A stretch of DNA of 64,000 nucleotides. Source: Isurus oxyrinchus (taxonomy: Eukaryota). Within the stretch, counting starts at the first letter, position 1, and the number at the start of each line of letters is the position of its first letter. A program made the position numbers and the translations under genes. This document shows positions 17,985-52,129 of this stretch, in pieces. The DNA lies in contig JANJGN010000026.1 in assembly GCA_026770705.1 (NCBI GenBank), positions 38,254,001-38,318,000 of the forward strand, in the 5' to 3' direction. A model generated the notes under the pieces. It was not told the DNA's origin and did no database searches. It was given only the letters and a program-made list of their open reading frames with translations.

Positions 17985-18360
17985 TATAGAGTCATAGAGG
18001 CCTATAGCACAGAAAAAGGCCCTTCGGCCCATCGAGTCTGTGCCCGTCAAACAAGTGCCTAAATATTCTAATCCCATTTTCCAGCACTAGGCCCATAGCC
18101 TTGTATACCATGGCATCGCAAGTGCACATACAAATACTTCTTTAACGTTTTGAGGGTTTCTGGCTCTACCACTCTTTCAGGCAGTGTGTTCCAGATTCCC
18201 ACCACCCTCTGGGTGAAAAAATTCTTCCTTGCATCCCCTCTAAACCTTTTGCCCCTTGTCTTAAATCTATGCCCCCTGGTTATTGATCCCTCCACTAAGG
18301 GGAAAAGCTCCTTCCTGTCTACCCTACCTATACCCCATATAATTTTATGCATCTCAATCA
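17985..18360 (-). mobile_element. CR1 LINE 3' end
   Basis: GRVDRKELFPLVEGSITRGHRFK..RKNFFTQRVVGIWNTLP. Confidence 0.85.
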
Positions 18361-19019
18361 CATGTGTGTTCCTGTGCACGTTCAGTGTACAGTGCTCCAT
18401 TCTGGAGGAAAGATCGAGGAGAGACAGCAGAAATTGCAGGGCAGCCAGGAATAGATGGGGCTACATGTCTTCATTCTCAGCTGTAACCACTCTGTCGCTT
18501 TATGTACAAAGCATTAAAAGGTAGATGGCAGCAATGGATGGAGCTGAGTTGCTTATGTAATGGGCTTGAAACCATTTTATGTTCCCTGATACAAGTTCAA
18601 ATCCTACATATTGAACCTGCAAACTACATTTAATAGTTTACATTTCTCACTGTTCCTGCTTTAAGAATGAGTTACAGAATTAATTATCTATTAAAAAAAT
18701 ATTTCAAATGCTTCCCAGTATTTTTCATTTCTGTTCATCCGCAGGCATTCACCAAATTTGCAGTTGGAAATGGAACAAAAACGGAGGCAATCTGGTGACA
18801 TCCTTGCTTTCTGGACATTTTTCTTTCCTTAGACAGCTGTCACTATCGGTGTGTGTGTGTGTGTGTGTGTTCCTCTGCGTGTGTCAATGTGGTTTAGTTC
18901 CCTGAGAGGGATAAACGCATTTTTACCATCGGAAACTTTATTCACTTTAGTTATGTGTCTTCATGGTAAATGGTACAGAGAATAATAGTAGTTTTAAAAG
19001 TTGCAAGAGGACCTTTACT

Positions 19020-24158: not shown

Positions 24159-24296
24159 CTGTAAAAGAGGATGAAATAATGAAGCAGATGTTTATAATCT
24201 GGGACATTTATGTTAGAGTTCTAATCAATGAAACATTGAGAGATTTTTCAAACCGCTTCTGTCAGTTTGAAGTGTGAGTGGATTGAATCTTCTCAC

Positions 24297-24424
24297 CTTT
24301 GCCAGAGTGACGGCAGTGCTGTAGAAAATGCTCAGGAAGAATAGGATGATGAATGTGGAAGCGGTTGTCCAGATGTTGCCGTTATCATCCTCAGAGTCTT
24401 CAATCCAGATGCGGTCTGTGGAAT
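24297..24424 (-). CDS. IGHM: IgM TM1 exon
   Basis: tag|(G)AT..DSTDRIWIEDSEDDNGNIWTTASTFIILFFLSIFYSTAVTLAK|gtgaga; acidic spacer and conserved antigen-receptor transmembrane (CART) motif. Confidence 0.93.
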
Positions 24425-26960: not shown

Positions 26961-27360
26961 GATTGTTGGGACATATTTCTGCGTGACCCTCACTTCAGTT
27001 CCCAGTGAGTGTGGTGCAGAAGCTTAAAGCTGGCATCCATTTTAAAGGGATGGACGACAAAAGAGGCAGGAACACCGAGATCTAAATGTGCTGTGTTTGT
27101 TTTCTCAGAAATGAGAAATTGTCAGATTTCTCCTCAGCGGGAGGAGAGCTGGTGAAGCTATTTTGCAGAATTCTGTAATGAATGAACTTTACTCTGTCTC
27201 TAACCCAGGGTGTATCTGAGCTGGGAGCACTGGATGTACATGACTTGGGTATGAGCCCTGTGAGTATCCGATTTTAACAAAACACATCTAAAATGATCAA
27301 AAGTGGAAAACAACATTAATTAAATGATTGTGCATTTAAATCACGATTGGAGAAAAGGAC

Positions 27361-27376
27361 TTTATTATTTTTTATT
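27361..27376 (-). terminator. Tandem poly(A) signals for secreted IgM mRNA
   Basis: Two AATAAA hexamers (27371-27376, 27361-27366) 28-43 nt after the secretory stop. Confidence 0.8.
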
Positions 27377-27403
27377 GTAGTTTGAAATGGAACCGAGAGA
27401 TTC

Positions 27404-27795
27404 TCATTGACATGAATTAACGGTGTCCATCAGTGCAAGGGAAATGTTCACAAAACTCGGTTTACCGCTGGATTTATCAACCGTTCTGTTGATGATCTTC
27501 AAGGGGATCGCTTCATGTCCCACCACACAGGAGTAAGAAGCGCCGCTGGCCCACTCCTCCGCTGCAATGGATAACAGGCTGTACATGAAGAAGGAGCGAT
27601 TGCCGTTCTCTGCCACTACCTCGGTGTTCTTGTAGTTTCCGGGAGCCACTGGCTTGTCATTGACGGTCCACTTGACGAAGATCTCTCGGGGGGAGAAACC
27701 TCTCACTAAGCAGCTGAGGGAGACGGACCTCTGAGCGGAGACATCTTCTGCCGAGGGCAGGAGGACAGACACGGAAGGTTCCCGCGGATCTTTAA
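27404..27795 (-). CDS. IGHM: IgM CH4 exon plus secretory tailpiece
   Basis: ctgcag|..[60 protein letters not shown]; internal donor G|GTAAAC at 27466/27465; tailpiece N-glycan site and penultimate Cys. Confidence 0.97.
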
Positions 27796-27949
27796 CTGCA
27801 GAAAATGTACAATAAATGTCAATAAGCTGCATACTTTCGTAGACAATGAAATGGCTGGTTAGATGTGAGAGAAACGTGTTTTGTGATGAATATTAAGGTT
27901 TTTCATTATCCACTTCTAGGAAATATATCACCGATTCTTCACTATAGCT

Positions 27950-28112
27950 GAATCAAAATCCTGGAACACCCTCCCTAACAGCACTGTGAGTGTATCTACA
28001 CCACATGGACTGCAGCGATTCAAGAAGGCAGCTCACCACCACCTTGTCAAGGGCAATTAGGGATGGGCAATAACTCTGGCCCAGCCAGCGACGCCTACAT
28101 CCCATGAATTAA
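27950..28112 (+). mobile_element. LINE/SINE 3' tail inserted in the CH3-CH4 intron
   Basis: caaaatcctggaac..ggactgcagcgattcaagaaggcagctcaccacc..agccagcgacgcctacatcccatgaat. Confidence 0.65.
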
Positions 28113-28499
28113 TTAATTAAATACTTTGGGATCTGTCCGGCTTTCCAGCTCGGAGCAGAGGTGGCACAATCCTTTTCCCTGGAGTTGGACGAGAAAGTTT
28201 CTCAAAGTTTACAGCACAGAAACAGGCCATTCTGCCCAACTGGTCCATGTTGGTGTTTTAGCTTCGCACCAGGCTCCTCCCATCTTGCTTCATCTAAACC
28301 CAATGGCACAACCTTCAATTCATTGTTCATTCATCTACTTATCAATTTCCCCCTGAAAGTCCACAGGCCCAGGGCGTTTAGTTGGCGAAATTGCTAATCA
28401 GAGTAGACCATGAATACAATGAATAGTAAATATTGATCCTTACACTTACACTGGAAATAGACACATCGAACAACTTATTGCTTCAATCTCACCGCTCAC

Positions 28500-28811
28500 C
28501 TGGTTCCTTGTGGATGGAACTTCTTAAAGGAGTCGGCAGATCCTGATGGCTCACCACGCAGTAGAACTCAGCCCCACTCAGCCAGGCTTGTGTCGAGATG
28601 TTTACGTTGCTGACCACGCTGTCGGGATCCTCTCCAGGTTGGACGGCGATTTCTGATTTCAGAGGCTTCTTCTCTTGTGTCCAGGACACGAGGACTCCAT
28701 AAGGAGCATTAGAAACGATGCAGGTTAAGGTCACGGTCGCTTCCAGTAAGACTTGTTCTATTGGAGGTGGCAATAGAGTAATTGTGGGATCGTTGTGGCA
28801 TTGGTGATCAC
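28500..28811 (-). CDS. IGHM: IgM CH3 exon
   Basis: 312 nt, phase 1/1, cag|..|gtgagc; C1-set Cys/Trp/Cys (LTCIV, VSW, FYCVVSH). Confidence 0.97.
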
Positions 28812-29427
28812 CTGTGAGACAGAAATGAAAATCAACCAAAGTTTCACCTTCAGGAGCAGGACAGCAGTATTCAGCTTTCACTCTCTGAAGGAGAATAAAT
28901 CACCTTGGACATATCAACCTCTAACTATTGTTTTTAATCTTCTTTACACAATGGAAAACCAGCTTGGTCTGTGTACATTGTTCTCAAAATTTAAGTCGTT
29001 CAGCCCCGGTAACATTCTCATGAATCTGCGTTGCCCCAGTCCCAATACAAATGTATCATTCATGGGCCCTGGAATGCAGGACTGAAAGCTGTTTTATAAA
29101 TAGCACTTTCCAACACTCTATCTCGAAGCTGTTACCAGTGAAGGGTTCCAGACACCTTCTGCCTCTCCAAATATGATCAGCTGACTCAAGGCAAAGCTGA
29201 TATCAAGTCCACCTCACTCACTCTATGACGTCAATGCAGAGACGTGATGTGATCAAATCCTGAATGGTGAATAATCCGAATGCAGCACTTACATTGGAAT
29301 GAAACACCAACTATATGATAGTAAATTAGAAGTTGTTCTGTGCTTTCTACTAACTCCAATAAATTCCTGATTTGATTAACATTAGAGTGCAGAATGCTCT
29401 ATTGCTTCCACGGTTTGTATTTCTTAC

Positions 29428-29742
29428 CCTCACACTTGGTGGCGTTTCGACTTTGGGTGACCCCTTGGTGAGTGACCTGACAGGTATACACTGCGTCGCT
29501 GAACCATTCCCCAGCGGAGACTTTCAGCCGACTGGTCGCCGAGAAGTTCCCGTTCATTTCAAAGGCGGGAGGGGTGATAATTCCTGAACTCATGGGTTGT
29601 CCATTTTTCAGCCACTTCACGGTGATTGGCTTCGGACGGAAATCGATGATTGAACAGACGGCGGTTGCAAATTTGTTCGTTGTGATTTCTTCCTTGGAGC
29701 TCACGGTGAGGAGAACAGTTGGATGTAAGATGTCAGGAGGAC
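29428..29742 (-). CDS. IGHM: IgM CH2 exon
   Basis: 315 nt, phase 1/1, aag|..|gtaaga; [18 protein letters not shown]. Confidence 0.96.
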
Positions 29743-29956
29743 CTTCAAAAAACACAGGTTAGCCATTTCTTGCAGAAGAAATTGATAACAGATACAATGA
29801 GTTCTTATATTTTAACAGGTTCTTTGCAGTCAATGGACACTAACCTGGAATTTCCAGGGATCAGAACTATGCAGAGCACTATTAATGCGTTATAACCAAG
29901 GCCCTATACAGGTCAATCACAGCCTTTCTGTTTCTCACAGGTTCCCCAACACTTAC

Positions 29957-30256
29957 ATTGCATTTCAACGCTCTTGTCTGAGACGCTGTGTCGAACCTCA
30001 CACTTGATTTTGCTGCATTCTCCCTCTGACTCGGTGATGGTTAATTGGCTGCTCAGGGTGTAGGTTCCCTTCTGGTTTCTCACTGACGGGTATGTCTTAA
30101 ATCCAGTGGTAATCTGCTGCCCATCTTTCTTCCAGGTCAAGCTTGTGATTTCTGGGGAGTAGTCCATCGCCAAACAGCCGTAGGTGACGGAGCCGTCGGT
30201 GTTTTGTTGCTGACAGGAGGAGACCAGGCTGTAGAGAGTGGGCGAAGACGGTGTCA
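29957..30256 (-). CDS. IGHM: IgM CH1 exon
   Basis: 300 nt, phase 1/1, cag|..|gtaagt; SSC (light-chain Cys), [16 protein letters not shown]. Confidence 0.97.
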
Positions 30257-30809
30257 CTGGGAAAGAATGGCCGATTGAACAAGTTAGACTCTGTGAATTG
30301 TGATCATTAAGTAACCAAACAACTTGAAATTAAACTATAACTATAAACATATCCAAATATATTCCAACTAAAACCCACATCCACATTTCATCATTTATTA
30401 TTTCCATCATTTGGTGATCCTCGCCTGTCAGTTCCCTCTTTAGAAACCCACACCTCTTTTTCCGCTTCTATCCCATTGCTAAAAGAGAACATTTTGATGT
30501 CATCTGAATGACGTACCTTTCAGTGGATTAAAATGGAAGAGCAGAGCATCTTCCCCATTATTTTGGCACCATTTATTTCTCAATCAACAGCACTTGGTGA
30601 TAGAGAAATTGTCTCGTCATTTATATCATTGCAGTTTGGAAACTGGCTATGTTCAAATTTACTCCCCGCTCCATGACCCCCAAAACAAAGAATAGCAACG
30701 ACTCTCCGAAGGTACCTTTGCAATGGTACCTTACTAGTGACCATAGAGCTCTAAATTGAATACCAGTTACAGTAAGTACGACGTTTTCCAATCGTATGTA
30801 CATGTGAAC

Positions 30810-32420
30810 ATGTGGATCAGTAGCAGGAGTAGGCTATTCGGCCTCTTGAGCCTCCTCCACCATTCACTCCGATCATAGCTGATCTGATTGTGGCGTTAAC
30901 TCCCGCCTACTCTCCGCTCATCTTTGACTCACTTGTCAATGAAGAATCTCTCTACTTCTGCCTTGAAATATTAATGACTCCTCCTCCATCGCTCTCTGGG
31001 AAAGACAGTTCCAAACTTTCACTACCCTTAGAGAAAAATATAAAATCTCCTCATTTCCGCCAGAATGGGAGACCTATTTTTAAACTCTGTTGCCTATCGT
31101 TAGTCTCTCCCACAAGCGGAAACATCCTTTCAGCATCCACCCTGTCATTTTCCTCCAGGATCTTATATGTTTCAATAAAATCAGTTCTTATTTTTCTAAA
31201 CTCTAATAGATACAGGCCTATCCAAACTTTCCTCATAAGATAACCGACGACACTTCCCAGTATCAGTTGAATGAACATTCTCTGAACAGCTTCTAATGCT
31301 TTTATATCCTTTCTTAAAGGAGACTAAATCTGTACACAGTAATTCAGACGAGGCCGCATTGACGCCTCGTTAAACTGTTACAAACCATCTTTACTTTTAT
31401 ATTATTTTCTATTATTAAGGATCCTATCATGGGTCATTAAGAAAATCCAAATGCAATTACGTAGATCCATCATGGTTTTGTGACAAGCAGAGTTCCACAG
31501 GGATCAATGCTGTGGCCTCAACTATTTACAATTTACATCAATGACTTTAATGAAAGGACTGAATGAATTTGCTAAATTTGCTGATGACACAAAGATAGAT
31601 AGGAGAGTAAGTGGTGAAGAGGGCATAAAGGTCAGCAAAGGGATACAGATAGGTTATAGGAGTGGGCAAAAAAATGACAGAGTATAAATTCCCCTTGTAA
31701 TAAATGACAACATTCCCTTTGCCTTCCTCATTACTTGCTGTTCCTGCATTATAACTTTTTGTGATTCATGCAGCAAGGGATCCGCATCCCTCTGTACCTC
31801 AGAGTTCAGCAATCTCTCTCCCTTTCAATAATATGCAGCTTTTGTATTCTTCCTGCCAAAGTGGGCACGTTTATATTTTCCCACGTTATACTCTGTCATT
31901 TTTTTGCCCACTCCTATAACCTATCTATGTCCCTTTGCTGACCTTTATCCCCTCTTCACCACTTACTCTCTTATCTATCTGTGTGTCATCAGCAAACTTA
32001 GCAAATTCATTCAGTCCTTTCATTTAAGTCATTGATGTAAATTGTAAATAGTTGAGGCCGCAGCATTGATCCCTGTGGCACTCCACTTGTCACAAAACCA
32101 TGATGGATCTACGTAATTGCATTTGGATTTCCTTAGTGACCCGTGATAGGATCCTTAATAATAGATTCCATCATTTTCGCTCGGACAGATGTTAAGCTAA
32201 CTGGCCTATCGGTTCTTGCTTTCCCGTTACCTCTTTTATTTGATATAAAAGCCTCATTCTCTATTTTCCAATCTGATGAGACTTTTCCAGAATCCAGGGG
32301 AGTTTGGAAAATTAAACCAATGCCTCTGCTATTTTAGTAACCACCTCGTTAAGGCCAAAATATTTGGCCAACTTCTCCGCCCATTTCCTTATTTTCCTTC
32401 ATTACAGGCTTGTCCAATCC
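30810..32420 (-). mobile_element. CR1 LINE relic containing a 280-bp inverted duplication
   Basis: LLEFRKIRTDFIETYKIL motif; arms 31408-31687 and 31886-32165. Confidence 0.75.
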
Positions 32421-32869
32421 GTGTCCTGTGGCTGGATAAGAGCCCCTGAAGCCCCTCCATATGGCCCCCGGAGATGTTGTTCAAAATGCTGGTCAGGCAG
32501 GTAAGTGGAGTTGAAGATATCTGGAAGGAGCTGCTCCTCCAATCACAGGCGAGTCTTCTACCCGTTAACTGCTGATAGGCTGACTGGTGGGCCTATCAGC
32601 AGTAAAAGTGGGAGGCAAACAGGTTGTGATTGGAGGGGCAGCAAGCACCTGCTGGAGAAATGCGCAGGGAGCCGGGGGGAAGCGCACGGAGACATTGTCT
32701 CCCTTCTATCCCAGGCACTGAGTGCCTTTCCCCGGGAATGGAAAGGATTTCAGGAGGAGGAGAGACAATGAGAGAGAGAGATAGAGAGAGTGGGGCCCAG
32801 GGCGCCTGGGGCCTCGGCTCGCAACTGCTGACACCCTGATCTCCCCGCTATAGCCCGCCTCGCTGCCCT

Positions 32870-34925
32870 TCGCCCACCCTCCGGCCTCTCTGCCCATTCC
32901 CCTCCGGCCTCTCTGCCTTTCCACCCCCCCACCCCGCCACCCCCCGCCACTTTGCCCTTTCCCCCTTGCCTCTCTGCCCTTTCCACCCCCCCGCTTCCCT
33001 GTCCTTCCTCCTCCTGCCTCTCTGTCCTCCACTGCCTCTCTGCCCTTCCCCCTGCCCTTTCCCCTTCTGCCCCTCTGCCTTCCCCCCTCCCGCCTCTCTG
33101 CCCTTCGCCCTCCCGCCTCTCTACTCTTTCCCCCTCCCTCCTCTCTGCCCTTTCCACCCCCGCCTCCCTGTCCTTCCTCCTCCTGCCTCTCTGTCCTCCA
33201 CTGCCTCTCTGCTCTTCCCCCTGCCCTTTCCCCTTCTGCCCCTCTGCCTTCCCCCCTCCCGCCTCTCTGCCCTTCGCCCTCCCGCCTCTCTGCCCTTTCC
33301 CCCTCCGTCTCTCTGCCCTATCCCCCTCCCTCCTGTCTGCCCTTTCCACCACCAGCTCCCTGCCCTTCCCCCTCCCGTTTCCCTGCCCTTCCCCCTCCCG
33401 CCTCCCTGCCCTTCCCCCTCCCGCCTCCCTGTCTTTTCCCCCTCTGCCTCCCTGCCCTTCCCCCTCTAGCTCCCTGCGCTTTCCTCTCTGCCTCTCTGCC
33501 CTTCGCACCTCTGCCTCTCTGCCCTTCGTACCTCTGTCTCTCTGCCCTTCCCCTGTCTCTCTGCCCTTTCCACCCGCCTCTCTCCTTTCCACCCCTGCCC
33601 TTTCCTCCTCTGCCTCACTGCCCTCCCCCCTCCTGCCTCTCTGCCCTTCCCCCCTCTACCTCCCTTCCCTTTCCCCTTCTGGCCTCTCTGCCCTTTCCCT
33701 CTCTGTCCCTCTGCCCTTCCCCCCTCTACCTCCATTCCCTTTCCCCCTCCCGCCTCTCTGCCTTTTCCCCCTCCCACCTCTCTGCCCTTTCCCCCTCCCA
33801 AATCTCTGCCCTTCCCACCTCTGCCCCTCTGCCCTTCCCCTTCGGACTCTCTGCCCTTACCCCTCCTGACTCTCTATCCTTTCCCTCTCTGCCTCTCTGC
33901 ACTATTCACTCCTCGCTTCCCTACCCTTCCCCTCCCGCCTCTCTGCTCTTCCCCCTCCCGCCTCTCTGCCCTTTCCCCCTCCCGCCTCTCTGCCCTTCCC
34001 CCTCCCGCCTCTCTGCCCTTTCCCCCTCCTGTCTCTCTGCCCTTTCCCCCTCCCGCCTCTCTGCCCTTTCCCTCTCCCGCCTCTCTGCCCTTTCTCCCCC
34101 AGTTCTCTGCACATACTCCACGGCTCCCTGTGCTTTTGCTCTGCTCTCTGACCTTTCCCACTGGCTTTATGATCTTTCCCCCAGCTATCTGCCCTTCCCA
34201 TCACCTCTCTGCCTTTCCCCTTCCCACCTCCCTGCCCCTTCCTCCTCCCGCCGCTCTGCCCTTTCCCTGTCTGCCTCTCTAGCCTTTCCCCCTCTGCCCT
34301 CCTACCCCCACCTCTCTGCCCTCCCCCCTCTGCCCATCCCCCGCCTCTCTGCCCTCCCCCCCCCTACCTCTCTGCCCTTTCCCCCTCCCACCTCTCTGCC
34401 CTTTCTCCCCCAGTTCTCTGCACTTACTCCATGGCTCTCTATGCTTTTGCTCCTCTTTCTGACCTTTTCCACTGGCTATACAATCTTTCCCCCGACTCTC
34501 TGCCCTTTCCATCGACTCTCTGCCCTTTCCCGCCTCATTGCCTTTCCCCCTCCCAACTCCCTGCCCTTTCTCCCCCCACCTCTCTGCCCTTTCCCCCTCC
34601 CCTCTCTGCCCTTTCCCCAACACGCCTCTCTGCCCCTTACTCCACTTCTCACTGACCTTTCCCCAGCTCTCTGCCCTTCCTACCAGGCTTCTCTGCCATG
34701 TCCTCCCCCTCCCCCTCCCCTCTGCCGTGCTGCACCCTCTATGCCCTATCTCCCACGCCTCTTTGCCCTTTCCCCCAGCCAACTGCACTTACTCTAAGGG
34801 TCCCTGCGCTTTCGCCTGGCTCTCTGATCTTTCCACTGATGCTAATCACTCCCTTCGGCCATGCTCCACCTTCTGACACTGTGAGGCCTCAGGCCTCGCT
34901 TCTAAGTCTCTCTTCCCCGCAGTTC
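32870..34925. repeat. Polypyrimidine/polypurine complex tandem repeat (G-rich on IgM sense strand)
   Basis: Repeating cccctcccgcctctctgcccttt units with larger internal duplications. Confidence 0.9.
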
Positions 34926-34964
34926 CCGCCCTCCCACACACTGATTTAGGAAAAGTGATCGAGT

Positions 34965-35967
34965 GAGTGAGCGTGTGCATAATTGACAGAGTGAGGGTGG
35001 GTGGCTGAGTGCGTGAGGGTGCGTGGGTGATTGAAGGAGTGAATGAGGGTGGGTAGTGAGTGAGAGTGGGTGGGTGTCTAATTGTGGGTGAGTGAGAATG
35101 ATATGAGTGAGTGAGGGCAGGTGTTTGAATGAGGGTAGATGAGTGGGTGATTGAGGGTTGGTGGGTATGTGAGGGTGCATATGTGAGTGATGGTGACTGG
35201 GTATATCAGGGTGGGTGGATGAGTGTGAATGAGGCTGGGTGGGTCAGGGTGACTGAGGGTGTGTGAGTGAGGGTGAGTAATTGATGGTGAGTGAATGAGG
35301 GTGAGTGAATGAGGGTGTGGTGGGGGTGAGTGTGTGAGGGTGAGTGAGGGTGGGTGAGTGAGGGTGGATGCGGCTGGGTGGGTAAGGGTGAGTGAGGGTG
35401 AGTAAGAGTGAGTGAGTGGTAGTGAGGAGTGAGGTTGAGTGAGGGTGAGTGAGGATGGTGAGGGTGCGTGAGTGATGGATGAGAGAGTGATGGGTGAGAG
35501 AGTGAGGGGTGTGAGTGAGGGGTGAGTGAGTGAAGGTGAGTGAGTAATTGATGGTGAGTCAAGGAAGGTGTGTGAAGGTGGGTGAGGGTGGATAATTGAG
35601 GGTGCCTGAGTGAGGGTGAGTGAGTGAGGGTGAGTGAGTGAGGGTGGGTGTGTGAGGGTGGGTGAGTGAGGGTGGGTGAGTGAGGGTGGGTGAGTGAGGG
35701 TGGGTGAGCAAGAGAGTGCAAGTGAGTAAGGGCGAGGGAGTGAGGGTGAGGGAGTGAGGCTGAGTGAGTGATGGTGGGTGAGCGAGGGTGGCTGAGGGCC
35801 AGTGAGTGAGGGCCAGTGAGTGAGGGTGAAGAAATGATGGTGAGGGAGTGAGTGTGAGGGAGTGAGGGTGAGTGAGTGAGTGAGATTGAGTGAGGGTGAG
35901 TGATTGTGGGTAGTGAGGGTGAGTGAGTGAGGGTGAGTGAGGGTGAGTGATTGTGGGTAGTGAGGGT
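34965..35967. repeat. (GAGTGAGG/GGGT)n low-complexity tract
   Basis: Direct observation; G-rich on the plus strand. Confidence 0.9.
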
Positions 35968-36147
35968 GCCCAGGTGCTGTAGGCTCATCAAGGTGATGTT
36001 TCTCCAGATGATTTTCTGCTCCGGCTCAGTTTTCCGTTGCCTGTTGTCCACAGCCGAGCTGGGGGCTCCTCCATTCAGCTCCACCACTTCCACCTCCTCC
36101 TCTTCATTTCCATCGATCCTGTCCCAATTCTCCAGATTGATCAGCTT
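35968..36147 (-). pseudogene. SCD: Stearoyl-CoA desaturase N-terminal fragment (SCD5-like)
   Basis: ..EPEQKIIWRNITLMSLQHLG resembles SCD5 QNIVWRNVVLMSLLHLG and SCD1 YVWRNIILMSLLHLG; no start codon, ends abruptly in the repeat tract. Confidence 0.75.
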
Positions 36148-36544
36148 TCAGTAACACCGGCTGTGTAAAGTTAGGCAGCAGTGTAGATCGCTGGCCAGCT
36201 GCTTTAATGCCGATGCCTTTCTTTGAGAAACCCATGTCAGTACACGAATAGGCAGACTGAGGGGGCTGGAGGGGAAGGTTACAGCAAAACCAGGATGGAC
36301 CGTGCATGCATCTTGCACCAACTGTGCACTGGTATTGGGGATCCAGCCGGCTGTGGTCTCCGTCACATCCCTCCCCTTTCCTTGCTTCTTTGTGTTTGGT
36401 TCAACACTTGGCAATTCTCCACATATATAGTGATTTCACCTGTGTAATTTCATTTTACACAAAAAGGCATCAGAAATGGAACAATGAACACGCATGCAGC
36501 TTAACGGATTTTCATTCTGCAGTTAGCATTTTCAGCCCACTTCT

Positions 36545-36748
36545 GTGTGTGAGAATGTGTGAGTGTCTGTGTGATAAAGAGAGAGAGAGAGTGCATGCAA
36601 GTGTTTGTGTGTTTTTAAGAGAGAGAGAGAGACAGAGACAGAGAGAGATGGAGTGTGTGTGAGAGAGAGTGTGTGTGTGTGTGAGATAGGGAGTATATGC
36701 GTGAGAGTGTGTGAAATGGAGAATGTGTGTGTGGGAGAGAAAGACTGC

Positions 36749-36782
<34 letters not shown>

Positions 36783-37510
36783 GTGTGTGTGAGAGGGGGA
36801 AAGTGTGTTTTTCTGTGCATGTCATAGGGAGTATAAGTGTGAGAGTGTCTGAGATAGGGAAATGTATGTATAAGAGTGCGCTGCTGTGTGTGTGTGAGAG
36901 TTAGAGAGAGAAAGAGAGAGAGAAAGAGAGTGTGTAGGGGTGTGAGTGATTGGTCGTATAAATGTGTGAGAGAAAGTGTGTGAGAGAGTGAACGTGTGTG
37001 TGGGAGAGAAAGAGTGTGTGAAAGAGAGAGCCAATGTTTGTATCAGAGAGAAAGAATGAGAGAGAGCGCAGGTGTGAGAGAAAGTGTGTGTGAGAGGGAA
37101 TGTGTTTGTGTTTCTGTGTGTGAGAGAGAGAGAATGGAGAGTGTGTACATGTGTGAGAGTGTGTATGTGTGTGGGAGAGACGATGCATGTATGTGAGAGA
37201 GAGAGAGTGGGTGTGCGTAAAAGTGAGGGAGTGTGCATGTGTTTGTGAATGTGAGAGAGAGTGCATGTGTGAGAAAGAAAGATTGCATGTGTGTGTGAGA
37301 GAGATAGTGTGCACCTGTGTTAGAGTGTGTATATTTGAGAGAGCATGTGTATGAGAGAATGTGAGTGTCTGTGTGAGAGTGTGTGTGAAAGAGAGAGGCA
37401 ATGTGTGAGAGACAGAATGTGTACAAGTTAAAGAGAATTTGTGTGTGAGCGGGAAAATGTGAGACTGTGTGTGTGTGACAAAGAGAGCGGGTGTGACAGA
37501 GAGAGTGAGC
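36545..37510. repeat. Mixed (GA)n/(GT)n degenerate microsatellite
   Basis: Direct observation. Confidence 0.9.
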
Positions 37511-38389
37511 GATTGAGGGTCTGTGGTAAAGACACTGAGTGTATCGAGGTAGAGTAGCCATGATCTTACTGAATGGAGGACAGGATCGAAGGGCCGAATG
37601 TCCTCTTGGTCCCTTATTTCTGTCATTCATTCCTCCCCCTGCAGGCGGCAATCCAATGACTCAGTTTTTGATGGCTGCTCCTTTTCCCCAAATCCCCCAC
37701 GGCTGGCTATTTGGAGCGGGAGGATGGTCATTGTCCATTTCAATTGTTTAAATAACTCGCAGCCCCTGATCAGATCAGAACAGGCGCTGCCCTCTGGAAA
37801 CTCACTGTCCCTCCCTGATTCTGAAATTGTGCTCAAGTTCAGCTCACTCACATTCAATGATTTTCTGATACTCAAAATGCTGAAACATAATTAATTCATT
37901 AAAATTTATACATATTCGCTCCAGAAATATGGTTAAAAACAATTAATGTGTGTCATTTCAAGCGAGCAATGGAGCAATTTATTTTCACAGATCTGGCTAG
38001 AGGACTCACAGCCAATTACTGATTCAGTTTGTTTGACATCTGCGGGGAAAAGACTGTCTGGTCAGTAACAGGACAAGTTAAGATATGGATTAAATCCCCC
38101 ACTCCTCCTCCGGTACACTCCTGTCATCAGCTGCAAGGGTGGGATTCAACAGAAAGCCAACTCTCCACTGAACTGCCAAACACTCCGGGGCAGGTACAGT
38201 ACTGGTTTGATATAAAATAAAACTCCCTCTACATTGTCCTATGAAGTATGCCCAGAAGAGGGTTCAATCCAGTTTCGATATAAATGCTGTGGCTGCAAGA
38301 GGTGGTCAGAGGCTGGGAATTCACTGGCGAGTAATTCACCCAAAGACAACCCACCATCTACATGTCACAAGTCTGGACTGGGATTGAAT

Positions 38390-38880
38390 AGTTTTCACTT
38401 GCCTCAATGAGTGAAACTTCAACAAACCCCAAGAAACCCGAAACTATCCAGGACAAAGCAGCCCACAGAATTGGTAGCCCATCCACTTAAACATTCACAC
38501 CCTCCCCCACAGACGCACAGTGAGAGCAGTATGTACCATATACAGGATGCACTGCAGCAACTCGCCAAGGCTCCTTCAGCAGCACCGTCAAAACCTGCAA
38601 CCTCTCCTAACTAGAAGGACAAGGGCAGCAAGTGCTTGGGAACACTGCCACCTGTACGCGCCCCTCCAAGGCACCCACCATCCTGACTTGGAATGATATC
38701 ACCGTGTCTTCACTCTCAATATGTCAAAATCCTGGAAATCCTTTCCTAACAGCACTGTGAGTGAACCTGCAGCTATTCAAGGAGGCGGCATTTCAACACT
38801 TCCTCAAGGGGTAATTAGGGATGGACAACAAATGCTGGCCTTGCCAGCGACCCCAACATCCTATGACAGGATTAAAAATA
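38390..38880 (+). mobile_element. CR1-group LINE 3' end (tail shared with SINEs)
   Basis: IQDALQQLAKAP-type end and tail identical in style to 27950-28112. Confidence 0.65.
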
Positions 38881-41800
38881 AGATACAGGCTAATTTCTTA
38901 TTCCATATTGTCCAACCAAATAGGTCAAGGACTGCTACAGCACGGATTAAAAGAGGATAAAACTCTCTCTGCATTGCCTAACCGAACACTCCCAAGACAG
39001 ATATATCACTGGTTTACAATCAACCAAATCTCCTTCAACAGTTTGTCTGTCATTTCTGAATTGTCCTTTCTGACTGTCACAATGGGTTCGGCATCTCATT
39101 TCTGAGGTGCCTGGTCAAAAAGTCAAACTTTCACATTTCTCACAGATACAAGTTTTTTGAAGAAATAAATCAAATTACACTTCCTGAAATACAGGAGAGT
39201 GAACCAGACGGTTTTCAACCAGTCAGGAAGATTCTTGGTCCCAGCACAATGAGCACACGCACTGAAACAGAACAGACACAAATGGTGCAACAAGCGAGTT
39301 CCCAGCAGAGAGATCTGTTCAATCTGTCCATTTCACTCAAGCTGTTTGATTCTAATTGATCAACGGTCAATTTACTACAATTATTCTATAACTTCTTTGA
39401 AATTAATCTGATTTTCATTTCAAACTTCCCTTTTAAGTCCATCTAATTCTCTCTGATCTGTCTCGAATCTCCAAATAATATAGGATTTAAGTTACCCTGA
39501 AAATGAGCACAGCAAAAATTACAGGTTCAAGATAATTTGGTGTCCATAACAGAGACTCAATGACAGGGTAAGAATTAAACAAATCAGGAAACATTCATAT
39601 TGAAAACCGATTACCCGCTGATTTGATTTGATTTTAGGTATGAATAGAACCAATAAAAACATCAAGGCGGAATTCCTTACCGATCTGAGCACAGCTGAGT
39701 AAGAAAAGTATTCTTTTCTAAATTAATTTCGGATTCAATTAAAAATTCTCTCCATTGAGATTTTGCATTCATTATAATGACCATTATACTATTTAGTTGT
39801 TGGAGCACATTTATGTTGAATTAATTATCACTAATATTATATTGTAAGCTAATGATCTTGTTATTGCCGACTCATTTTCTTGTCAGCTGATTTCTACTCT
39901 ATAATATTAAAAATGGTTTTCAAAAATTGAAAATTTGTTTCTCCCTGGTACTTAGTGAAATAATTGGGGTTTATTTAAATCAACCTGACACTGAAACAAT
40001 GTTAAACAATAAACTGCAAATTGCTAGATGGTAACATTCAGGCAAGTGTATCAATTTTACTTAAATCTAAGCACGATATACGATTTTGCTTCTACTTCTA
40101 CTGCTCTGATTTAACCAACAATATTGCAAGCTATGCGTGTTTCCGAACGCATTGAGAAATCATAAATTCCATCTATTCTCATCGAGTAATTCACAGGGTG
40201 AATTTATCAGTGGAATATTGGAAATACTTTCAAATCTGGCCGGGTTCACATCGCATTAAGTGTCGATGAGCTGTAATATCATCTGTTTGCTAAAGGAAAC
40301 TTTTCTTAACTCCAAACTATATGTAAGAAAATGTTCCTGGCAGTTACTTATTATCAATAAAATGTTTCCTTGATAAAAATCCCTATTCTTTAATTGTTAC
40401 ATTTTTGTTCATTGAAAGAAGATCCAAACTGATCAATATAAAACTTGATGAGAACAGTTCATTCATATCATCTGTGACACTGAAATATAATCAGCAAATT
40501 GAATCGAGATTTTGTTCTTCAATTTAATATTTAATAAGAATTAAGCATGAATCTCAGATATAATCTGTTCTTCTCCTATAATCCTAACCTGTGCACAGTA
40601 CAGCTCTGATAGACAGGATGTTGTTATTAAAATCAAAACTAACATTAATGTTTGCAATTAAATTAATTTGTTCTAATTTCAAGCCTTTCCTTGTCAATCT
40701 CTATTCATATGCAATCTGCACCTTCCTACAGTTCAAAAAAACGTAAGAACAATTCATTTACTGCCAGCGAATTCCACCCCTCACCCCCACCAACCCCAGA
40801 AAACTGTTTAAGATTAGATTAGTGACAATTGTCTCGCTATCCAAATCCCAATGACATTGAAGGAATAATATGGTTACAGCTGCACAGAAAGAACGTAACA
40901 ACCGGATAGACACATTGCCAAACTGAAATGTCAAACTCCTCTTTAAGTCAATGCAACCGTTATCAGCGATATAACAAATAATTCAAAATCCCATGTGAAA
41001 TTGACCAAATTTGTAGAATCAGTATATTCTTATTGAAATTGTTTCATTAATAAATCACAAAATGTTTCCAGCCTAAAAACTTTCCCGAGCATGTTAATTG
41101 TGCGCAGTGCCCAACAAAATTATGAAAGGCCGATTAATGATCAATTATGTTAATATGAAAGCTGTTCAGTTAATATAGAGAAATATTACCACATTATAAT
41201 TGTTTGAATTGTATTAGTTTTACTCTACAACTTGAAAATGTGGTAATTATATAGTTTCTGATTGCAGTAACGAATTATATTCTGAATGAGCGCCATAATC
41301 CATGGTTTAGTTTAATCTGCAATTATCACTTAAAATAAAGACAACATGTTCTAACACATCTTTAAGAGCTTTTTTCCCATTTCTGAAACCTGTCTGTTTT
41401 CTGCCTACAATCGCGCTTCAAGCAGATACGAACGCGGAGGCTGCTTCGATTCAATCGCAAAACGTGTAACCGCTCAATATCACCGAGTTTAAACAAAGCA
41501 GAAACAATGCAGAACCGCCAAACCGTTTCATAAATTCTACTTGTTCAAAGTCACCCAGACACACAATCTCCTCAGCAGAAAAACACCAAATCACATCACT
41601 GAGGGGCTGAAACCCGTTTCATGGAGAAGCAGCTCAATTCTACAAACACTTCCAACAGAATCCAATGTAATATTGCAAGAAAATCTCAATATCGAATCCA
41701 GACAACCGCTCGTCACCAAATGAATGAATAATTAAACTAAACAGAAATATGGAATAATGTCAACAGCATTGTGAGTAGGCGGAACATGTTCAATAAATTA

Positions 41801-42215
41801 ATATTGAAACTTAAGCATATTTTGTTAACATTGGGTTTGATTTCAAACTTGTTTAATCCCTTGTGCAACAGATGGTAAAACCCGCAGCCATTAGATGTCA
41901 CCGAGATTAAACATTGCAGAAACGTCGAACTGTTTTTACAAACGTTAGATGTTTCAAGAAGCCCGGCCACACAGTATCCTCAGCAGATAAATACCAAATC
42001 ACAACAACCAGGGTCTCAATCCCTCAGCAACATTTTTTATCAAGACACAGCGGAATTACATAACTCAATTTCAGCAGAATCACATGAAACATTGTAAAAA
42101 TTCTGCATACAGAATCCATCAAACCCAGGTTTCGTTGGCTGAATGAATTATTAAAATAGACAAAAAAAACAAACACTCAAATAAAACAGTTACTAAATAA
42201 ATGTGTGGTTCTTAC

Positions 42216-42263
42216 CTGCAGTCACCGTCACCATGGTCCCTTGTCCCCAGTAGTCCATCCCGT
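42216..42263 (-). CDS. IGHJ: Ig heavy-chain J segment (germline)
   Basis: GMDYWGQGTMVTVTA|gtaaga; WGxG motif, phase-1 donor. Confidence 0.97.
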
Positions 42264-42302
42264 CACAGTGTTACATTCCCTGGGCTGTGCCATACAATAA
42301 CT
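42264..42302 (+). other. JH recombination signal, 23-bp spacer
   Basis: CACAGTG-23-ACAATAACT. Confidence 0.93.
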
Positions 42303-42631
42303 GTCCCTGCACCAAAAAGACAGAAATCCACCATTATTTTAAATATTCCTAAGTCAGAGGCAAAGGGAGGTCACGATGAATCTTCGCGAAATTATATTTG
42401 CGTTTGTAGATATCTGTAGCTACTCATCAATGATCCTCGAGTTTTATAATTCACAGAATAACACATGAACATGTTATTGAATTCACCAATTGATGAATGG
42501 ATAATTATCACAGCTTTTCCATCTTAAACCAGGTTTTTTGGGCAGTGCTGGACAAAAATAATACTTCATTGTAAATATAGCAGGATTGTAAAAGCGAGCA
42601 CTGACCCAGGCAGACTCAATTAGTGCTGAGG

Positions 42632-42659
42632 GGTTTTTGTATTGACAGTAACTGCTGTG
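42632..42659 (-). other. D2 3' recombination signal, 12-bp spacer
   Basis: CACAGCA-12-ACAAAAACC. Confidence 0.92.
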
Positions 42660-42672
42660 CCATCCAGCATAT
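42660..42672 (-). CDS. IGHD: Ig heavy-chain D2 segment ATATGCTGGATGG
   Basis: 13 nt between two 12-RSS; frames ICWM / YAGW / MLD, no stops. Confidence 0.92.
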
Positions 42673-42700
42673 CACAGTGAGAGACACCATGTCAAATACT
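42673..42700 (+). other. D2 5' recombination signal, 12-bp spacer
   Basis: CACAGTG-12-TCAAATACT. Confidence 0.88.
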
Positions 42701-43005
42701 GCGGCAGACTGTTAACTGTAAATACAGAGATTTAATTTCACTGCGCTCTCAAAAACCTGATTCCGACTCACCTAAGTGTGAATCAGTGAGGTATTTCAGC
42801 CTGTGCTGGTCATTATATTTTAAATGTGACTGGAGGTCTTTAAAAGCCTCTGTGAAGATTTAGCGTGTCCGTAAACACAAAGCGGAATACTTTTATATAT
42901 TTTTGCAAACCAATATTACTTATACCCATTATTTTATTTAGCTCCCATTTTCTTTGACTTTTCCTGTTGTGATAGTGATCACCAATTTGAACAAACTCCT
43001 TCTGA

Positions 43006-43043
43006 AGTTTTTGTAAGAGGATGTCGCTGTGCACAGCACTGTG
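43006..43043 (-). other. D1 3' recombination signal, 22-bp spacer
   Basis: CACAGTG-22-ACAAAAACT. Confidence 0.92.
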
Positions 43044-43057
43044 ACCCCCTGTAGTAT
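43044..43057 (-). CDS. IGHD: Ig heavy-chain D1 segment ATACTACAGGGGGT
   Basis: 14 nt between 12- and 22-RSS; frames ILQG / YYRG / TTGG. Confidence 0.92.
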
Positions 43058-43085
43058 CACAGTGAAATACACCCGCACAAAAACT
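43058..43085 (+). other. D1 5' recombination signal, 12-bp spacer
   Basis: CACAGTG-12-ACAAAAACT. Confidence 0.93.
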
Positions 43086-43455
43086 GCACCCACTCTCTGT
43101 TCAGTGCTGCCTCGCAATATTTACTTCAAATAGACGTTTACTTCTGATCTAGTTTAGTATTTATGCAGCAATTTACAAAACTCAATGAATAGTGATCCCG
43201 TCCAAGTATCAGACATATTCAAATGAACATTATAGCTATGTCTGTAATTGTGGAAACTATTAACAGTAAATGTAAGCACAGCCAAAAGCTCAGCCCATTA
43301 TATCAATTGGTTTGTTAGGTTTTATAGTTAAATTTGCTGCTTTACTTTGGTCAGAAGCGACTAGTTGTCGGGTTCTGATCATTACAGTTAATATTACATT
43401 TAAAACAAGTACTGACCGTCAGGTTACGATGGCAGTTGTTGAGTTTCTCTCGATC

Positions 43456-43494
43456 TGTTCTTGTTCGGGTCCAGCCCTGGTTCCTCTCGCTGTG
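43456..43494 (-). other. VH recombination signal, 23-bp spacer
   Basis: CACAGCG-23-ACAAGAACA directly after YYCTRD. Confidence 0.9.
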
Positions 43495-43799
43495 GTCTCT
43501 TGTACAGTAATAGATGGCGGTGTCTTCAGTCTTCAGGCTCGTCATGTCCAAGGAGAAGATGTTCCTTGAAGTGTCTTTGGACGCAGTGAATCGATTCTTA
43601 ATTGCTGGGGCATAGTTGTTGCTGGATGAACTATAGTACCAAAGCAGCCACTCCAGCCCCTGTCCGGGAACCTGTCGGACCCAACACATGCCGTAGCTGC
43701 CAAGATTGAAGCCGCTGGTTTTACAGGTCAGTCTCAGGGAGCCTCCGGGACGCCCGGTCTCTGCCTCTGGCTGAGTCAACACAACCTCCGACTGAACAC
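43495..43799 (-). CDS. IGHV: Ig heavy-chain V exon (germline, open)
   Basis: cag|[28 protein letters not shown]36..[10 protein letters not shown]; canonical Cys22, Trp36, YYC. Confidence 0.98.
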
Positions 43800-43928
43800 C
43801 TGTAAAAATAAATCAAAAACCCCGAGGATTAATCCTGGTGAAATGATTTCTGACTCTGTAACATTCCAGAGAGAGACTAACACTGAGACAGTAACAGTGA
43901 GAGACTTGGACAATAAAAAACTACTCAC

Positions 43929-43974
43929 GGGATAAGAAAGTCAGCAACAAACTGAGAGAAATCGCCGACCTCAT
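43929..43974 (-). CDS. IGHV: VH leader exon
   Basis: ATG..MRSAISLSLLLTFLS C|gtgagt, phase 1, joins V exon in frame (..SRVQS). Confidence 0.95.
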
Positions 43975-44059
43975 CGTTTTGGTCATTTGGGGAAAATGGT
44001 TCTGTCCAGAACTCAGTGAACAAACCAGCTCCCGGACTGTTGGATTCCGGCCCCAGTGA

Positions 44060-44125
44060 GTGGCATTTAAATACCCGGCAGAAAGGGGCGGGTTTCCAGG
44101 CGCCGCCTATTGATTCCCTGGTGGA
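44060..44125 (-). promoter_or_regulatory. VH promoter
   Basis: TATTTAAA at 44066-44073, GC box at 44085-44092, local CpG enrichment; no exact ATGCAAAT octamer. Confidence 0.65.
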
Positions 44126-45899
44126 GGCGGCGACTGGATCCATGCCCCACCTTCCAAATCCCCAACAGAATGGACTCGATATTTACAATAAGTTATTGTG
44201 AAAAGTGGAAATTTTATCTGTATCGGGATATTTGGCTGAATGGATTCATTGTAATGTCTCCATTGGTTCTAATGGCGAAATTGCATTTGAGCGTCTATTA
44301 ATAAAAATCTAATTCCATTCTAAATTAAGTCCATTTATTTCTACACTACTGCCCCCGGGGTTGAGCCTAAAAAAATTACATTATCAGGGAATAAAGGTCA
44401 GTCTGTTTTGCAGCAACGCCGGGTCTATATCTCACTACAATAATTAAGCGTCATCAGTCATAGGAATTATTATTGATTTTTGTAACTAAATGCGGGGGAT
44501 GAACAAAATGATTCTATTTACAGCCAAGGTGGCTATCGCTGTTCAATTTGGATCCGAAGATAAGAAGAATCTCCTCACATTATACAATGCCTCTCCTTGC
44601 ATTTCTCGATCTGCCCAGTTCCAAAGACAGTCCTGTGAAAATTAGCGATAAAAGAAGCCCGCCTGCCTGATAAGTCAACAGTAAGCTTACAGAGAAACGT
44701 AAAATTTACATCAACTTTTGACAAAGAAGTTAATGAATCAGAACAGACACGGAGATCAGAAAAGTTATCCTTCAGCATCCAAATCATTGCAGCTAATTTT
44801 ATTGGCCTCCCGCTGTCTACCATTCACTGGTATTGGGAACACAGGATATCAGGACTTTGCGGCATATTACACAATATCACAAGAATAAATGTTTTATCTT
44901 CCACTGAAGCTGGTCACGAACTTATCATTTCTCCACTCATTGGCAGCTATGAGAGGGACTGTTAAATAATCGCAATCATCACAAAGTAAACTGTACAGTT
45001 CACGGTACTAATGAGGTTTAAGGGACACCACAGGCTAAATGAGGTGCACAACTGGAGGAATATTCAAGGAATTCCTGCAGGTTCAATACAATTCTATGAT
45101 GTTCTTTTAATTTAATTTATTTTAATTTTTTTCCATTCTACTTAGCTCATTAGACTGGGGGATTGAGACCATCAACATCGCTCTCTCGCACTCCATGAAG
45201 TTCTTAATAAACCGGCTTTAATAACTGGAATGCCCTTTACTTAGAAATAATATAAATTAAGTAATATGTGGTGAATTTAATATTTTCTGATCGAGTTTAA
45301 TTTCACAGTGAACACGGCATTCATTCAAATATTTCCTTTAATGAAGTACCATTTAAAATGTGCCTTTCGTGTGCCACAGAAATATTTATTGTTTGAATGG
45401 CTAAAACCATTTTGTTCAATCATATCCCGGCTAATCCAACCCACACAGTATTTGGAAGCAAGCCAGCCAGCTGCAGTCAGGGAGGCTCGAATGTCCGATG
45501 TTGTTTACAGGAAGCATCTGGGGGGTTTGTGCAGTTAATCAAAGATCTGTTTCCTCAGAAGTGGCCGCTTGGCTGCAAGCCAACTTCAAACCCTTAGCAT
45601 TGTCAACAAGGCCTATTTATAAACAAATCTACCCAGCAACAACACTGGAGTCAGTTTTATTTTTTAAGTTGTGAACCTATGTGAACTGTTTCCATCTCTC
45701 AGGGAAGAAAAGTTATCCAGCTTCTCTGACATCCTGTTAGCAACAATAGCTCATTGGAGGATCTCTCCAACACATCATAAAAGTCTGATGGATGGATGGA
45801 AAGAATTACAGACAGACTATTAGAGAGGACTCAGAGAGAGGACACATGTTTTTAACAGTCAAACATATACATTTGTGTGATTTTTTTGCCCCTTTACTC

Positions 45900-51960: not shown

Positions 51961-52129
51961 GAGAGTAGACTGATTGAGCTGCAAGGGGACAGACCTGATC
52001 TGTTGTCCATTATGTACAGCGCTCTATCTTTGCACTATGTTCATCATTTTCAGGTATGCCTGGTCTTGCTTCTGACCTGCTGGCCTACATTCCTCATTGT
52101 TCCCAGACTGGATGTTGGACTCATAAACT

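What the first reader, a model, noticed from the sequence alone, without database searches (positions are those of the whole stretch)
32870..34925. 2-kb G-rich, strand-skewed repeat in the J-CH1 intron resembling a switch region
Seen: on the IgM sense (non-template) strand the tract is almost pure G/A with G-runs (..GGGAAAGGGCAGAGAGGCGGGAGGGG..), and nearly every unit carries an RGYW motif (GGCA). Known: tetrapod S regions are G-rich on the non-template strand, form R-loops/G4 and lie in the J-C intron; inter-cluster VDJ-to-C switching through the J-C intron has been reported in nurse shark without a defined S region. Inference: a convergent or primordial switch/recombination substrate. Caveat: AGCT palindromes are scarce here, unlike mammalian S-mu.
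Basis: partly seen in the sequence, partly recalled or inferred. Interest (0 to 1): 0.7.

Follow-up and report, generated by a model that had tools for sequence, protein, structure and literature searches.

The report
G-rich minisatellite in shark IgM intron
A 2-kb stretch of degenerate 23-letter repeats, very rich in G on the coding strand, sits in the long intron of a catshark IgM antibody gene; it has the composition of a mammalian antibody switch region but lacks that region's key enzyme target motifs and nearby promoter, so it is most likely an ordinary repeat array.

Summary
Window 32850-34935 is a degenerate tandem array of about 85 units of 23-24 nt, with sense-strand consensus GGCAGAGAGGCGGGAGGGGGAAA. 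On the IgM sense (-) strand it is 54% G and 85% purine. It lies inside the 11,957-nt J-CH1 intron of a complete IgM cluster, 7.3 kb after J and 2.6 kb before CH1.

By sequence rules it is the only kb-scale R-loop/G4-prone stretch on the sense strand. It is not a high-copy dispersed repeat, and its 31-letter words occur in a second, related organism.

The switch-region reading is weak:
- AGCT (1.9/kb) and WGCW (9.2/kb) are below the window background.
- AID hotspots summed over both strands are not enriched.
- The array starts about 7.8 kb from the V promoter.
- About 2.5 kb of repeats with the opposite skew lie just upstream.
- The CpG in the unit is decaying.

Best reading: an ordinary G-rich minisatellite (0.62). 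A real role in inter-cluster switching is about 0.1.

Other IgH clusters of this genome could not be read, so conservation across them is untested. The scan has not noted this feature on other DNA.

The parts
32850..34935 (-). G-rich degenerate minisatellite. Sense-strand unit GGCAGAGAGGCGGGAGGGGGAAA(G), about 85 units. G 49-57% per 500 nt and G4Hunter +1.0 to +1.5.
34041..34930 (-). The 5' third of the tract in the sense direction. It is built of about three higher-order repeats of ~311 bp, each a ~90-nt less G-rich spacer followed by 23-mers.
   Evidence: D4: two 202-nt copies 311 apart, 83% identical; the third copy was read directly (34770-34850)
32879..33477 (-). 169-bp higher-order repeats inside the 23-mer array.
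   Evidence: period 169, 7 copies; D3
34970..35975 (-). Adjacent upstream array (CCCTCACTCA)n. It is C-rich on the sense strand (C up to 55%, G 2%), so its skew is opposite to the tract. Contigs pile up heavily on it in public runs.
36555..37530 (-). Second upstream array (CTCTCACACA)n-like, C-rich on the sense strand.
32208..32718 (.). 511-bp segment just 3' of the tract in the sense direction. It is missing from other copies in the source organism's runs. It contains a 113-nt nested hairpin at 32530-32642.
   Evidence: (joint 32207>32719 in X1 and X2, two contigs each)
30700..32300 (.). Intron stretch between the tract and CH1 made of highly repeated (transposon-like) DNA.
   Evidence: summed contig depth 7e4-2.7e5, against 2e3-5e3 on CH1
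42216..42263 (-). J segment. Heptamer cactgtg at 42264-42270; the splice donor gt begins at 42215.
   Evidence: read directly
43495..43800 (-). V exon, followed by the heptamer cacagcg. The leader ATG is at 43972-43974.
29913..30257 (-). CH1 exon (C1-set). CH2 is 29399-29755, CH3 28489-28881, CH4 with secretory tail 27404-27832, and the TM1 exon about 24270-24400.

Best explanation
The tract is an ordinary, old, degenerate G-rich minisatellite. It grew inside the long J-CH1 intron of this IgM cluster by slippage and unequal exchange, and it travels with the cluster when the cluster duplicates. It has no dedicated switch function.

Shown: its repeat structure, composition, position, low copy number relative to transposons, unit-number variants and CpG decay.

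Inferred: when the rearranged gene is transcribed, the G-rich RNA and non-template strand would tend to form R-loops and G-quadruplexes. The tract could therefore be an incidental pause or fragile site, but not a selected AID target.
For: 1. Structure. The units are 72% alike and few are identical, with 169- and 311-bp higher-order duplications, as expected for an array evolving by unequal exchange.

2. Length variants. Contigs of the likely source sample carry forms that skip 46, 300 and 526 nt inside the tract, which are whole units or higher-order units (table 5).

3. CpG decay. The one CpG of the unit is decaying: position 11 is C in 19 and T in 9 of the 31 aligned units of 22-25 nt, and the next position is G in 23 and A in 5. 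Tract CpG observed/expected is 0.42, against 0.36 for the window. This points to methylated, unconstrained DNA.

4. Repeat cluster. The tract is one of three adjoining tandem arrays spanning 4.7 kb. The other two have the opposite G/C skew, so the strand bias is not a feature of the intron as a whole.

5. AID motifs. WGCW and AGCT are depleted, and hotspots over both strands are not enriched.

6. Divergence. The share of 31-mers held by organism B relative to organism A is about 0.48 for the tract and about 0.55 for the 6-kb stretch around it. That is roughly 2.3% against 1.9% divergence by my rough calculation, so there is no sign of special constraint.
Against: - In 64 kb the only strongly G/C-skewed blocks lie in this intron.
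- The tract's G density of 54% with 84 G-runs per kb exceeds the 46% that supports CSR in a mouse B-cell line (PMC4245955).
- An artificial 1-kb G-rich cassette partly rescues CSR in mice in one orientation only (PMC5485518).
- The tract is not a genome-wide repeat, and it is kept in a second organism.
- Sharks do switch between clusters although their loci are said to lack switch regions (PMC4279169, PMC4588147). A switch-like role is therefore not excluded.
Confidence: 0.62

Rival explanations
1. Primordial or convergent switch-like substrate. Transcription from the rearranged VDJ promoter forms R-loops or G4 in the tract, AID and repair factors make breaks there, and the breaks are joined to the same tract in another cluster.
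For: - It lies in the J-C intron upstream of CH1.
- It is a 2-kb tandem repeat with 54% G on the non-template strand, G4Hunter +1.0 to +1.5 and 16 canonical G4 motifs.
- It is the only kb-scale R-loop-prone stretch on the sense strand in a crude QmRLFS-like scan.
- One TGC (a WRC hotspot) per unit sits on the template strand.
- It is not a dispersed high-copy repeat and is present in a second organism.
- G-rich sequence alone gives partial, orientation-dependent CSR in mice (PMC5485518).
Against: - AGCT is 1.9/kb and WGCW 9.2/kb, both below background. Synthetic switch regions carry 4 AGCT per 80 bp (PMC4245955).
- The strand an R-loop would display has 9.5% C and 18 WRC/kb, against a background of 52/kb.
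- The tract starts about 7.8 kb from the V promoter after rearrangement, and no intronic promoter was identified. Distance lowers R-loops and CSR (PMC4245955).
- About 2.5 kb of C-rich sense-strand repeats precede it.
- The unit's CpG is decaying.
- No public RNA run listed holds its words, which is weak evidence.
- From my own memory of Zhu et al. 2012, not held in the library and so unverified: shark switching accompanies hypermutation, which acts near the VDJ.
Confidence: 0.1
2. Cis-regulatory or RNA-processing element. The dense G-runs act as a Pol II pause site, a binding platform for G-run proteins of the hnRNP H/F or MAZ/Sp type, or a boundary element that tunes IgM transcription or splicing.
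For: - 172 G-runs in 2 kb on the sense strand.
- Predicted G4 in the RNA covers 5-32% of nucleotides per 300-nt segment, against 0-2% in control intron segments.
- High G density lowered transcription in the mouse system (PMC4245955).
Against: - No conservation beyond one close relative could be shown.
- The units are degenerate and the CpG is decaying.
- The tract is far from both splice sites, at 7.3 and 2.6 kb.
- No binding or expression data are available.
Confidence: 0.1
3. An internal or tail array of a transposable element that inserted into the intron.
For: - The intron next to the tract is full of highly repeated DNA at 30.7-32.3 kb.
- A 511-bp insertion-like segment with a nested hairpin abuts the tract.
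Against: - Summed contig depth on the tract (about 50-2,000, one bin 10,000) is 100 times lower than on the transposon bins and no higher than on CH1.
- There are no other copies in the 64-kb window.
- No terminal repeats bracket the tract.
Confidence: 0.08

Closest known systems
Mammalian Ig switch regions (S-mu, S-gamma, S-alpha)
   Same: Both are kb-scale tandem repeats in the intron 5' of the CH exons. Both are G-rich and G-clustered on the non-template strand and are predicted to form R-loops and G4. The tract is 54% G, against the 46% used in functional constructs (PMC4245955).
   Different: The tract has almost no AGCT/WGCW (1.9 and 9.2 per kb). Its hotspots sit on the template strand only. 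It is 7.3 kb from J and has no known germline promoter 200-600 bp upstream. Whether every cluster has one is unknown.
Xenopus S-mu
   Same: A repetitive region in the J-C intron of a cold-blooded vertebrate.
   Different: Xenopus switch regions are AT-rich rather than G-rich (PMC4279169, PMC8201067). From my own knowledge they are dense in AGCT, which is the opposite of this tract on both counts.
Classical G-rich hypervariable minisatellites (Jeffreys type)
   Same: The unit is tens of nucleotides long, there is strong purine/G asymmetry between strands, and the units are degenerate with higher-order duplications and unit-number variants. The GGGCAG-containing core resembles the minisatellite core as I remember it; that comparison was not tested here.
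   Different: Germline hypervariability between individuals was not measured. The tract's position in an antibody gene intron gives it a transcription context in B cells that most minisatellites lack.
Synthetic 1-kb G-rich cassette replacing S-gamma1 in mice (described in PMC5485518)
   Same: [quoted passage not shown]
   Different: The cassette sat at a real switch position behind a germline promoter and gave only a partial rescue. This tract is untested and far from a promoter.

Membership tests
Ig switch (S) region | Lies in the intron 5' of the constant-region exons | tested here: met
   The tract, 32850-34935, is inside the J-CH1 intron 42215-30258.
Ig switch (S) region | Tandem repeats 1-12 kb long | tested here: met
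   About 2.1 kb of 23-24-nt units.
Ig switch (S) region | G-rich, G-clustered non-template strand able to form R-loops (mammalian type) | tested here: met
   G 54%, 172 G-runs, G4Hunter +1.0 to +1.5, and a hit in a QmRLFS-like scan. This is sequence prediction only; no R-loop was measured.
Ig switch (S) region | High density of overlapping AID hotspots (WGCW, especially AGCT) | tested here: not met
   AGCT 4 sites (1.9/kb, window 3.2/kb). WGCW 19 sites (9.2/kb, window 18.1/kb).
Ig switch (S) region | Sits a few hundred bp downstream of a germline (I) promoter | tested here: inconclusive
   The tract is 7.3 kb from J and about 7.8 kb from the leader ATG after rearrangement. No octamer occurs in the intron. 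Eukaryotic promoters cannot be called with these tools.
Ig switch (S) region | Counterpart present upstream of the partner constant genes (other clusters) | tested here: inconclusive
   Variant forms of the tract and matching words occur in the source organism and in a second organism. DNA of other clusters could not be fetched.
Ig switch (S) region | Recombination breakpoints and AID mutations map to it in B cells | not testable with these tools
   No B-cell DNA or long-read data were available. The single read-laying run used germline-type contigs.
G-rich minisatellite | Tandem units of about 10-60 nt with strand asymmetry in G/purine | tested here: met
G-rich minisatellite | Unit-number variation between copies or alleles | tested here: met
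   Contig joints skip 46, 300 and 526 nt within the tract in run X1. Whether these are alleles or paralogous copies is unresolved.
Dispersed transposon-borne or satellite repeat | High copy number across the genome | tested here: not met
   Summed contig depth on the tract is no higher than on CH1 and about 100 times below the neighbouring transposon bins (the tool warns that depth is rough). There is no second copy in the window.

The most novel reading that the evidence does not exclude
Catshark IgM clusters carry a dedicated, sense-strand G-rich, R-loop-forming tract in the J-C intron. It serves as the break-and-join zone for inter-cluster isotype switching. That would be a switch region of the 'R-loop only' type, predating or converging on tetrapod switch regions, and it would contradict the textbook statement that shark Ig loci lack them.
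Probability: 0.1. Interest if true: 0.85.

Novelty: new member of a known kind. Interest (0 to 1): 0.35.

Why it matters
Reviews state that shark Ig loci have no switch regions even though VDJs are moved between clusters (PMC4279169, PMC4588147, PMC8201067). A kb-scale, sense-strand G-rich repeat in a shark J-C intron is therefore a concrete, cheap-to-test candidate. Mapping switch junctions against it would show whether R-loop-prone DNA was recruited before AGCT-rich switch repeats evolved. If it is only a minisatellite, as the evidence favours, it still matters as a likely obstacle to assembly and PCR and as a possible fragile site in a highly transcribed B-cell gene.

Tried and rejected
- Fetching other shark IgM clusters.
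- Searching the protein collection with the 280-aa ORF read through the tract, hoping to find related tracts by their spurious ORFs. Nothing was found.
- Rfam scan of 27000-44200. No family matched.
- Primary papers Zhu 2012 (PMC3360817) and Zhang 2013 (PMC3839419), and one review (PMC6084782), are not held.
- Earlier findings of the scan. No similar tract is noted in the other windows of this genome.
- H-DNA/triplex idea rejected. There are no purine mirror repeats with arms of 10 nt or more, and the longest pure purine run is 23 nt.
- Coding reading rejected. The ORFs across the tract are low-complexity read-throughs on both strands.
- Assembly-artefact reading rejected. Contigs of several independent runs cover every bin.
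- An octamer-based hint of an intronic promoter. ATGCAAAT is absent from the intron.

Full report
**What is there**

The + strand of window 32850-34935 is C/T-rich, with GC 0.62-0.69, GC skew -0.65 to -0.78 and AT skew down to -0.88. Tandem Repeats Finder gives a 23-nt unit with 63.6 copies, 72% matches and score 803 at 32946-34403, plus flanking arrays of 22-24 nt and higher-order periods of 47 and 169 nt.

The consensus 23-mer matches 20 times with up to 3 mismatches, all inside the tract, against none in 100 shuffles. A blastn of the tract against the whole window finds nothing outside 32700-35000.

On the - strand the tract is G 54.4%, A 30.7%, C 9.5% and T 5.4%. It has 172 runs of three or more G and 16 non-overlapping canonical G4 motifs. 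Splitting at GGCA gives 77 anchors, with modal spacings of 23 and 24 nt, and the sense-strand consensus GGCAGAGAGGCGGGAGGGGGAAA(G). Very few units are identical.

The part of the tract nearest J is built of about three ~311-bp higher-order repeats. The rest contains 169-bp ones.

**Gene context**

The - strand carries a complete IgM cluster:
- leader ATG at 43972-43974
- V exon 43495-43800, followed by a heptamer
- D1 near 43050 and D2 near 42680, both flanked by recombination signal sequences
- J 42216-42263, followed by the donor gtaag
- CH1 29913-30257, CH2 29399-29755, CH3 28489-28881, and CH4 with the secretory tail 27404-27832, all C1-set domains
- a TM1 exon at about 24270-24400

The J-CH1 intron is 11,957 nt. 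The tract begins 7.3 kb after J and ends 2.6 kb before CH1.

Earlier notes of the scan describe this genome as a catshark with dozens of near-identical IgM clusters (s1-300787, s1-300792). I did not test that.

**Profile of the whole intron on the sense strand**

- The first 4.5 kb is AT-rich and unremarkable.
- 37.7-35.0 kb holds two arrays that are C-rich on the sense strand, with C up to 55% and G4Hunter down to -1.07.
- 34.9-32.8 kb is the G-rich tract, with G4Hunter +1.0 to +1.5.
- Ordinary sequence follows. It includes a 511-bp insertion-like segment and 1.6 kb of highly repeated DNA.

These three blocks are the only ones in the 64 kb with |GC skew| above 0.6, and they are contiguous. 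They count as one repeat cluster, not three independent observations.

A crude QmRLFS-like scan makes the tract the only kb-scale R-loop-forming stretch for IgM-sense transcription. It also finds a mirror-image stretch at 35133-37215 for antisense transcription. ViennaRNA with G-quadruplexes places 5-32% of sense-strand nucleotides in G4, none on the antisense strand, and 0-2% in control intron segments. Triplex (H-DNA) potential is weak.

**AID target content**

Rates per kb; the background is the window averaged over both strands. A sense-strand RGYW or GYW site is a template-strand WRCY or WRC site.

| Motif | Tract | Background |
|---|---|---|
| AGCT | 1.9 (4 sites) | 3.2 |
| WGCW | 9.2 | 18.1 |
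| RGYW, sense strand | 52 | 27.1 |
| WRCY, sense strand | 6.3 | 27.1 |
| RGYW + WRCY summed | 58 | 54 |
| WRC, sense strand | 18.5 | 52.5 |
| WRC, template strand | 56.4 | 52.5 |
| WRC, both strands | 75 | 105 |

It means one TGC per unit on the template strand, which an R-loop would cover with RNA. The displaced strand has few cytosines. The rest of the intron is not AGCT-rich either, with 0-4 sites per 500 nt.

For comparison, functional synthetic switch regions carry 4 AGCT per 80 bp. In those constructs a G density of 46% rather than 29% raises both R-loops and CSR. Switch regions lie 200-600 bp from their promoters, and added distance lowers CSR (PMC4245955). A 1-kb G-rich cassette partly rescues CSR in one orientation only, and the title of a Cell Reports paper in the reference list of PMC5485518 says that switch strength depends on R-loop formation and the number of WGCW sites.

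The tract therefore meets the R-loop half of the definition and fails the WGCW half. It is also badly placed relative to the only known promoter.

**Is it a dispersed repeat?**

Contigs of four public runs, two organisms, were laid on 29900-35899 at 80% likeness or more. The tool warns that contig depth is rough, so I use only order-of-magnitude contrasts.

| Region | Summed depth |
|---|---|
| 30700-32300 | 7e4 to 2.7e5 in most bins |
| 35300-35900 | 1e4 to 6e4 |
| CH1 | about 1e3 to 5e3 |
| Tract bins | about 50 to 2e3 (one bin 1e4) |

Near-exact contigs on the tract have the same depth as near-exact contigs on its flanks: 194, against 224-256, in run X1. The tract is thus not a high-copy genome-wide repeat.

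The same sample holds forms that skip 46, 300 and 526 nt inside the tract. These are alleles or paralogous copies with different unit numbers, as expected of a minisatellite.

A form lacking 32208-32718 also exists, at similar depth. This shows that other copies share the sequence bordering the tract.

**Conservation**

Sampled 31-mers of the tract alone are held at 0.43-0.53 by the four runs of organism A. They are held at 0.19-0.23 by about 16 runs of organism B from the other six holder studies. For the 6-kb stretch the shares are 0.53-0.56 and 0.29-0.31.

By my rough conversion this is about 2.3% divergence for the tract against 1.9% for the surroundings. The tract is inherited in a close relative, with no sign of either special constraint or hypervariability.

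The unit's single CpG is decaying: C 19 and T 9 of the 31 aligned units of 22-25 nt, with G 23 and A 5 at the next position. CpG observed/expected is 0.42, near the window's 0.36. This fits methylated, neutrally evolving DNA.

Deeper comparison was not possible.

**Literature**

Reviews say that shark Ig loci lack switch regions and cryptic promoters. They also say that VDJs are nevertheless joined to C regions of other clusters, concurrently with hypermutation and AID expression (PMC4279169, PMC4588147, PMC8201067). The primary papers are not held.

**Verdict**

It is weakened further by promoter distance, by the opposite-skew neighbours and by the signs of neutral decay.

- Most likely (0.62): an ordinary G-rich minisatellite that duplicates along with the cluster and is incidentally R-loop- and G4-prone.
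- A genuine switch-like role remains possible (about 0.1) and is directly testable.
- Other readings: a regulatory or RNA-processing element (0.1), or a transposon-derived array (0.08).

Noticed in passing
window 32208-32718 (hairpin 32530-32642): A 511-bp segment is absent from other copies in the source organism's runs; the joint 32207>32719 has GCAGA between its two sides. It holds a 113-nt nested hairpin made of 18-nt and 16-nt inverted arms. It is probably a small mobile element. No Rfam family matches it.
   Followed up: partly
window 34970-35975 and 36555-37530: Two tandem arrays, (CCCTCACTCA)n and (CTCTCACACA)n on the sense strand, lie directly upstream of the G-rich tract with the opposite G/C skew. 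For antisense transcription they form a mirror-image R-loop-prone zone (35133-37215). The first array draws very high contig depth in public runs.
   Followed up: partly
window 58685-63980, also 53354-54721 and 57006-57587: A satellite of more than 4.7 kb with a 54/108/162-nt period, built on a 27-nt subunit. Related 27-nt arrays occur in both orientations nearby.
   Followed up: no
window 4189-5064 (- strand): A 291-aa ORF of tandem C2H2 zinc fingers (Pfam zf-C2H2, zf-H2C2_2) lies about 20 kb beyond the IgM TM exon.
   Followed up: no
protein P0001: A 132-aa protein 96% identical to this CH1 exon is filed in NCBI as a hypothetical protein of Salmonella enterica, on a 480-bp contig. This is almost certainly shark DNA contaminating a bacterial assembly.
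   Followed up: no
window 30700-32300: The intron between the tract and CH1 is made of very high-copy repeats, with hundreds of contigs ending at 31101, 31147, 31569 and 32087-32094. These are likely nested transposon fragments.
   Followed up: no
window 9763-10083, 18068-18400, 52050-52367, 57679-58526: Several ORF fragments share a conserved C-terminal motif (…FFTQRVV..WN.LP..VVE…). They look like remnants of one retrotransposon family scattered around the cluster.
   Followed up: no
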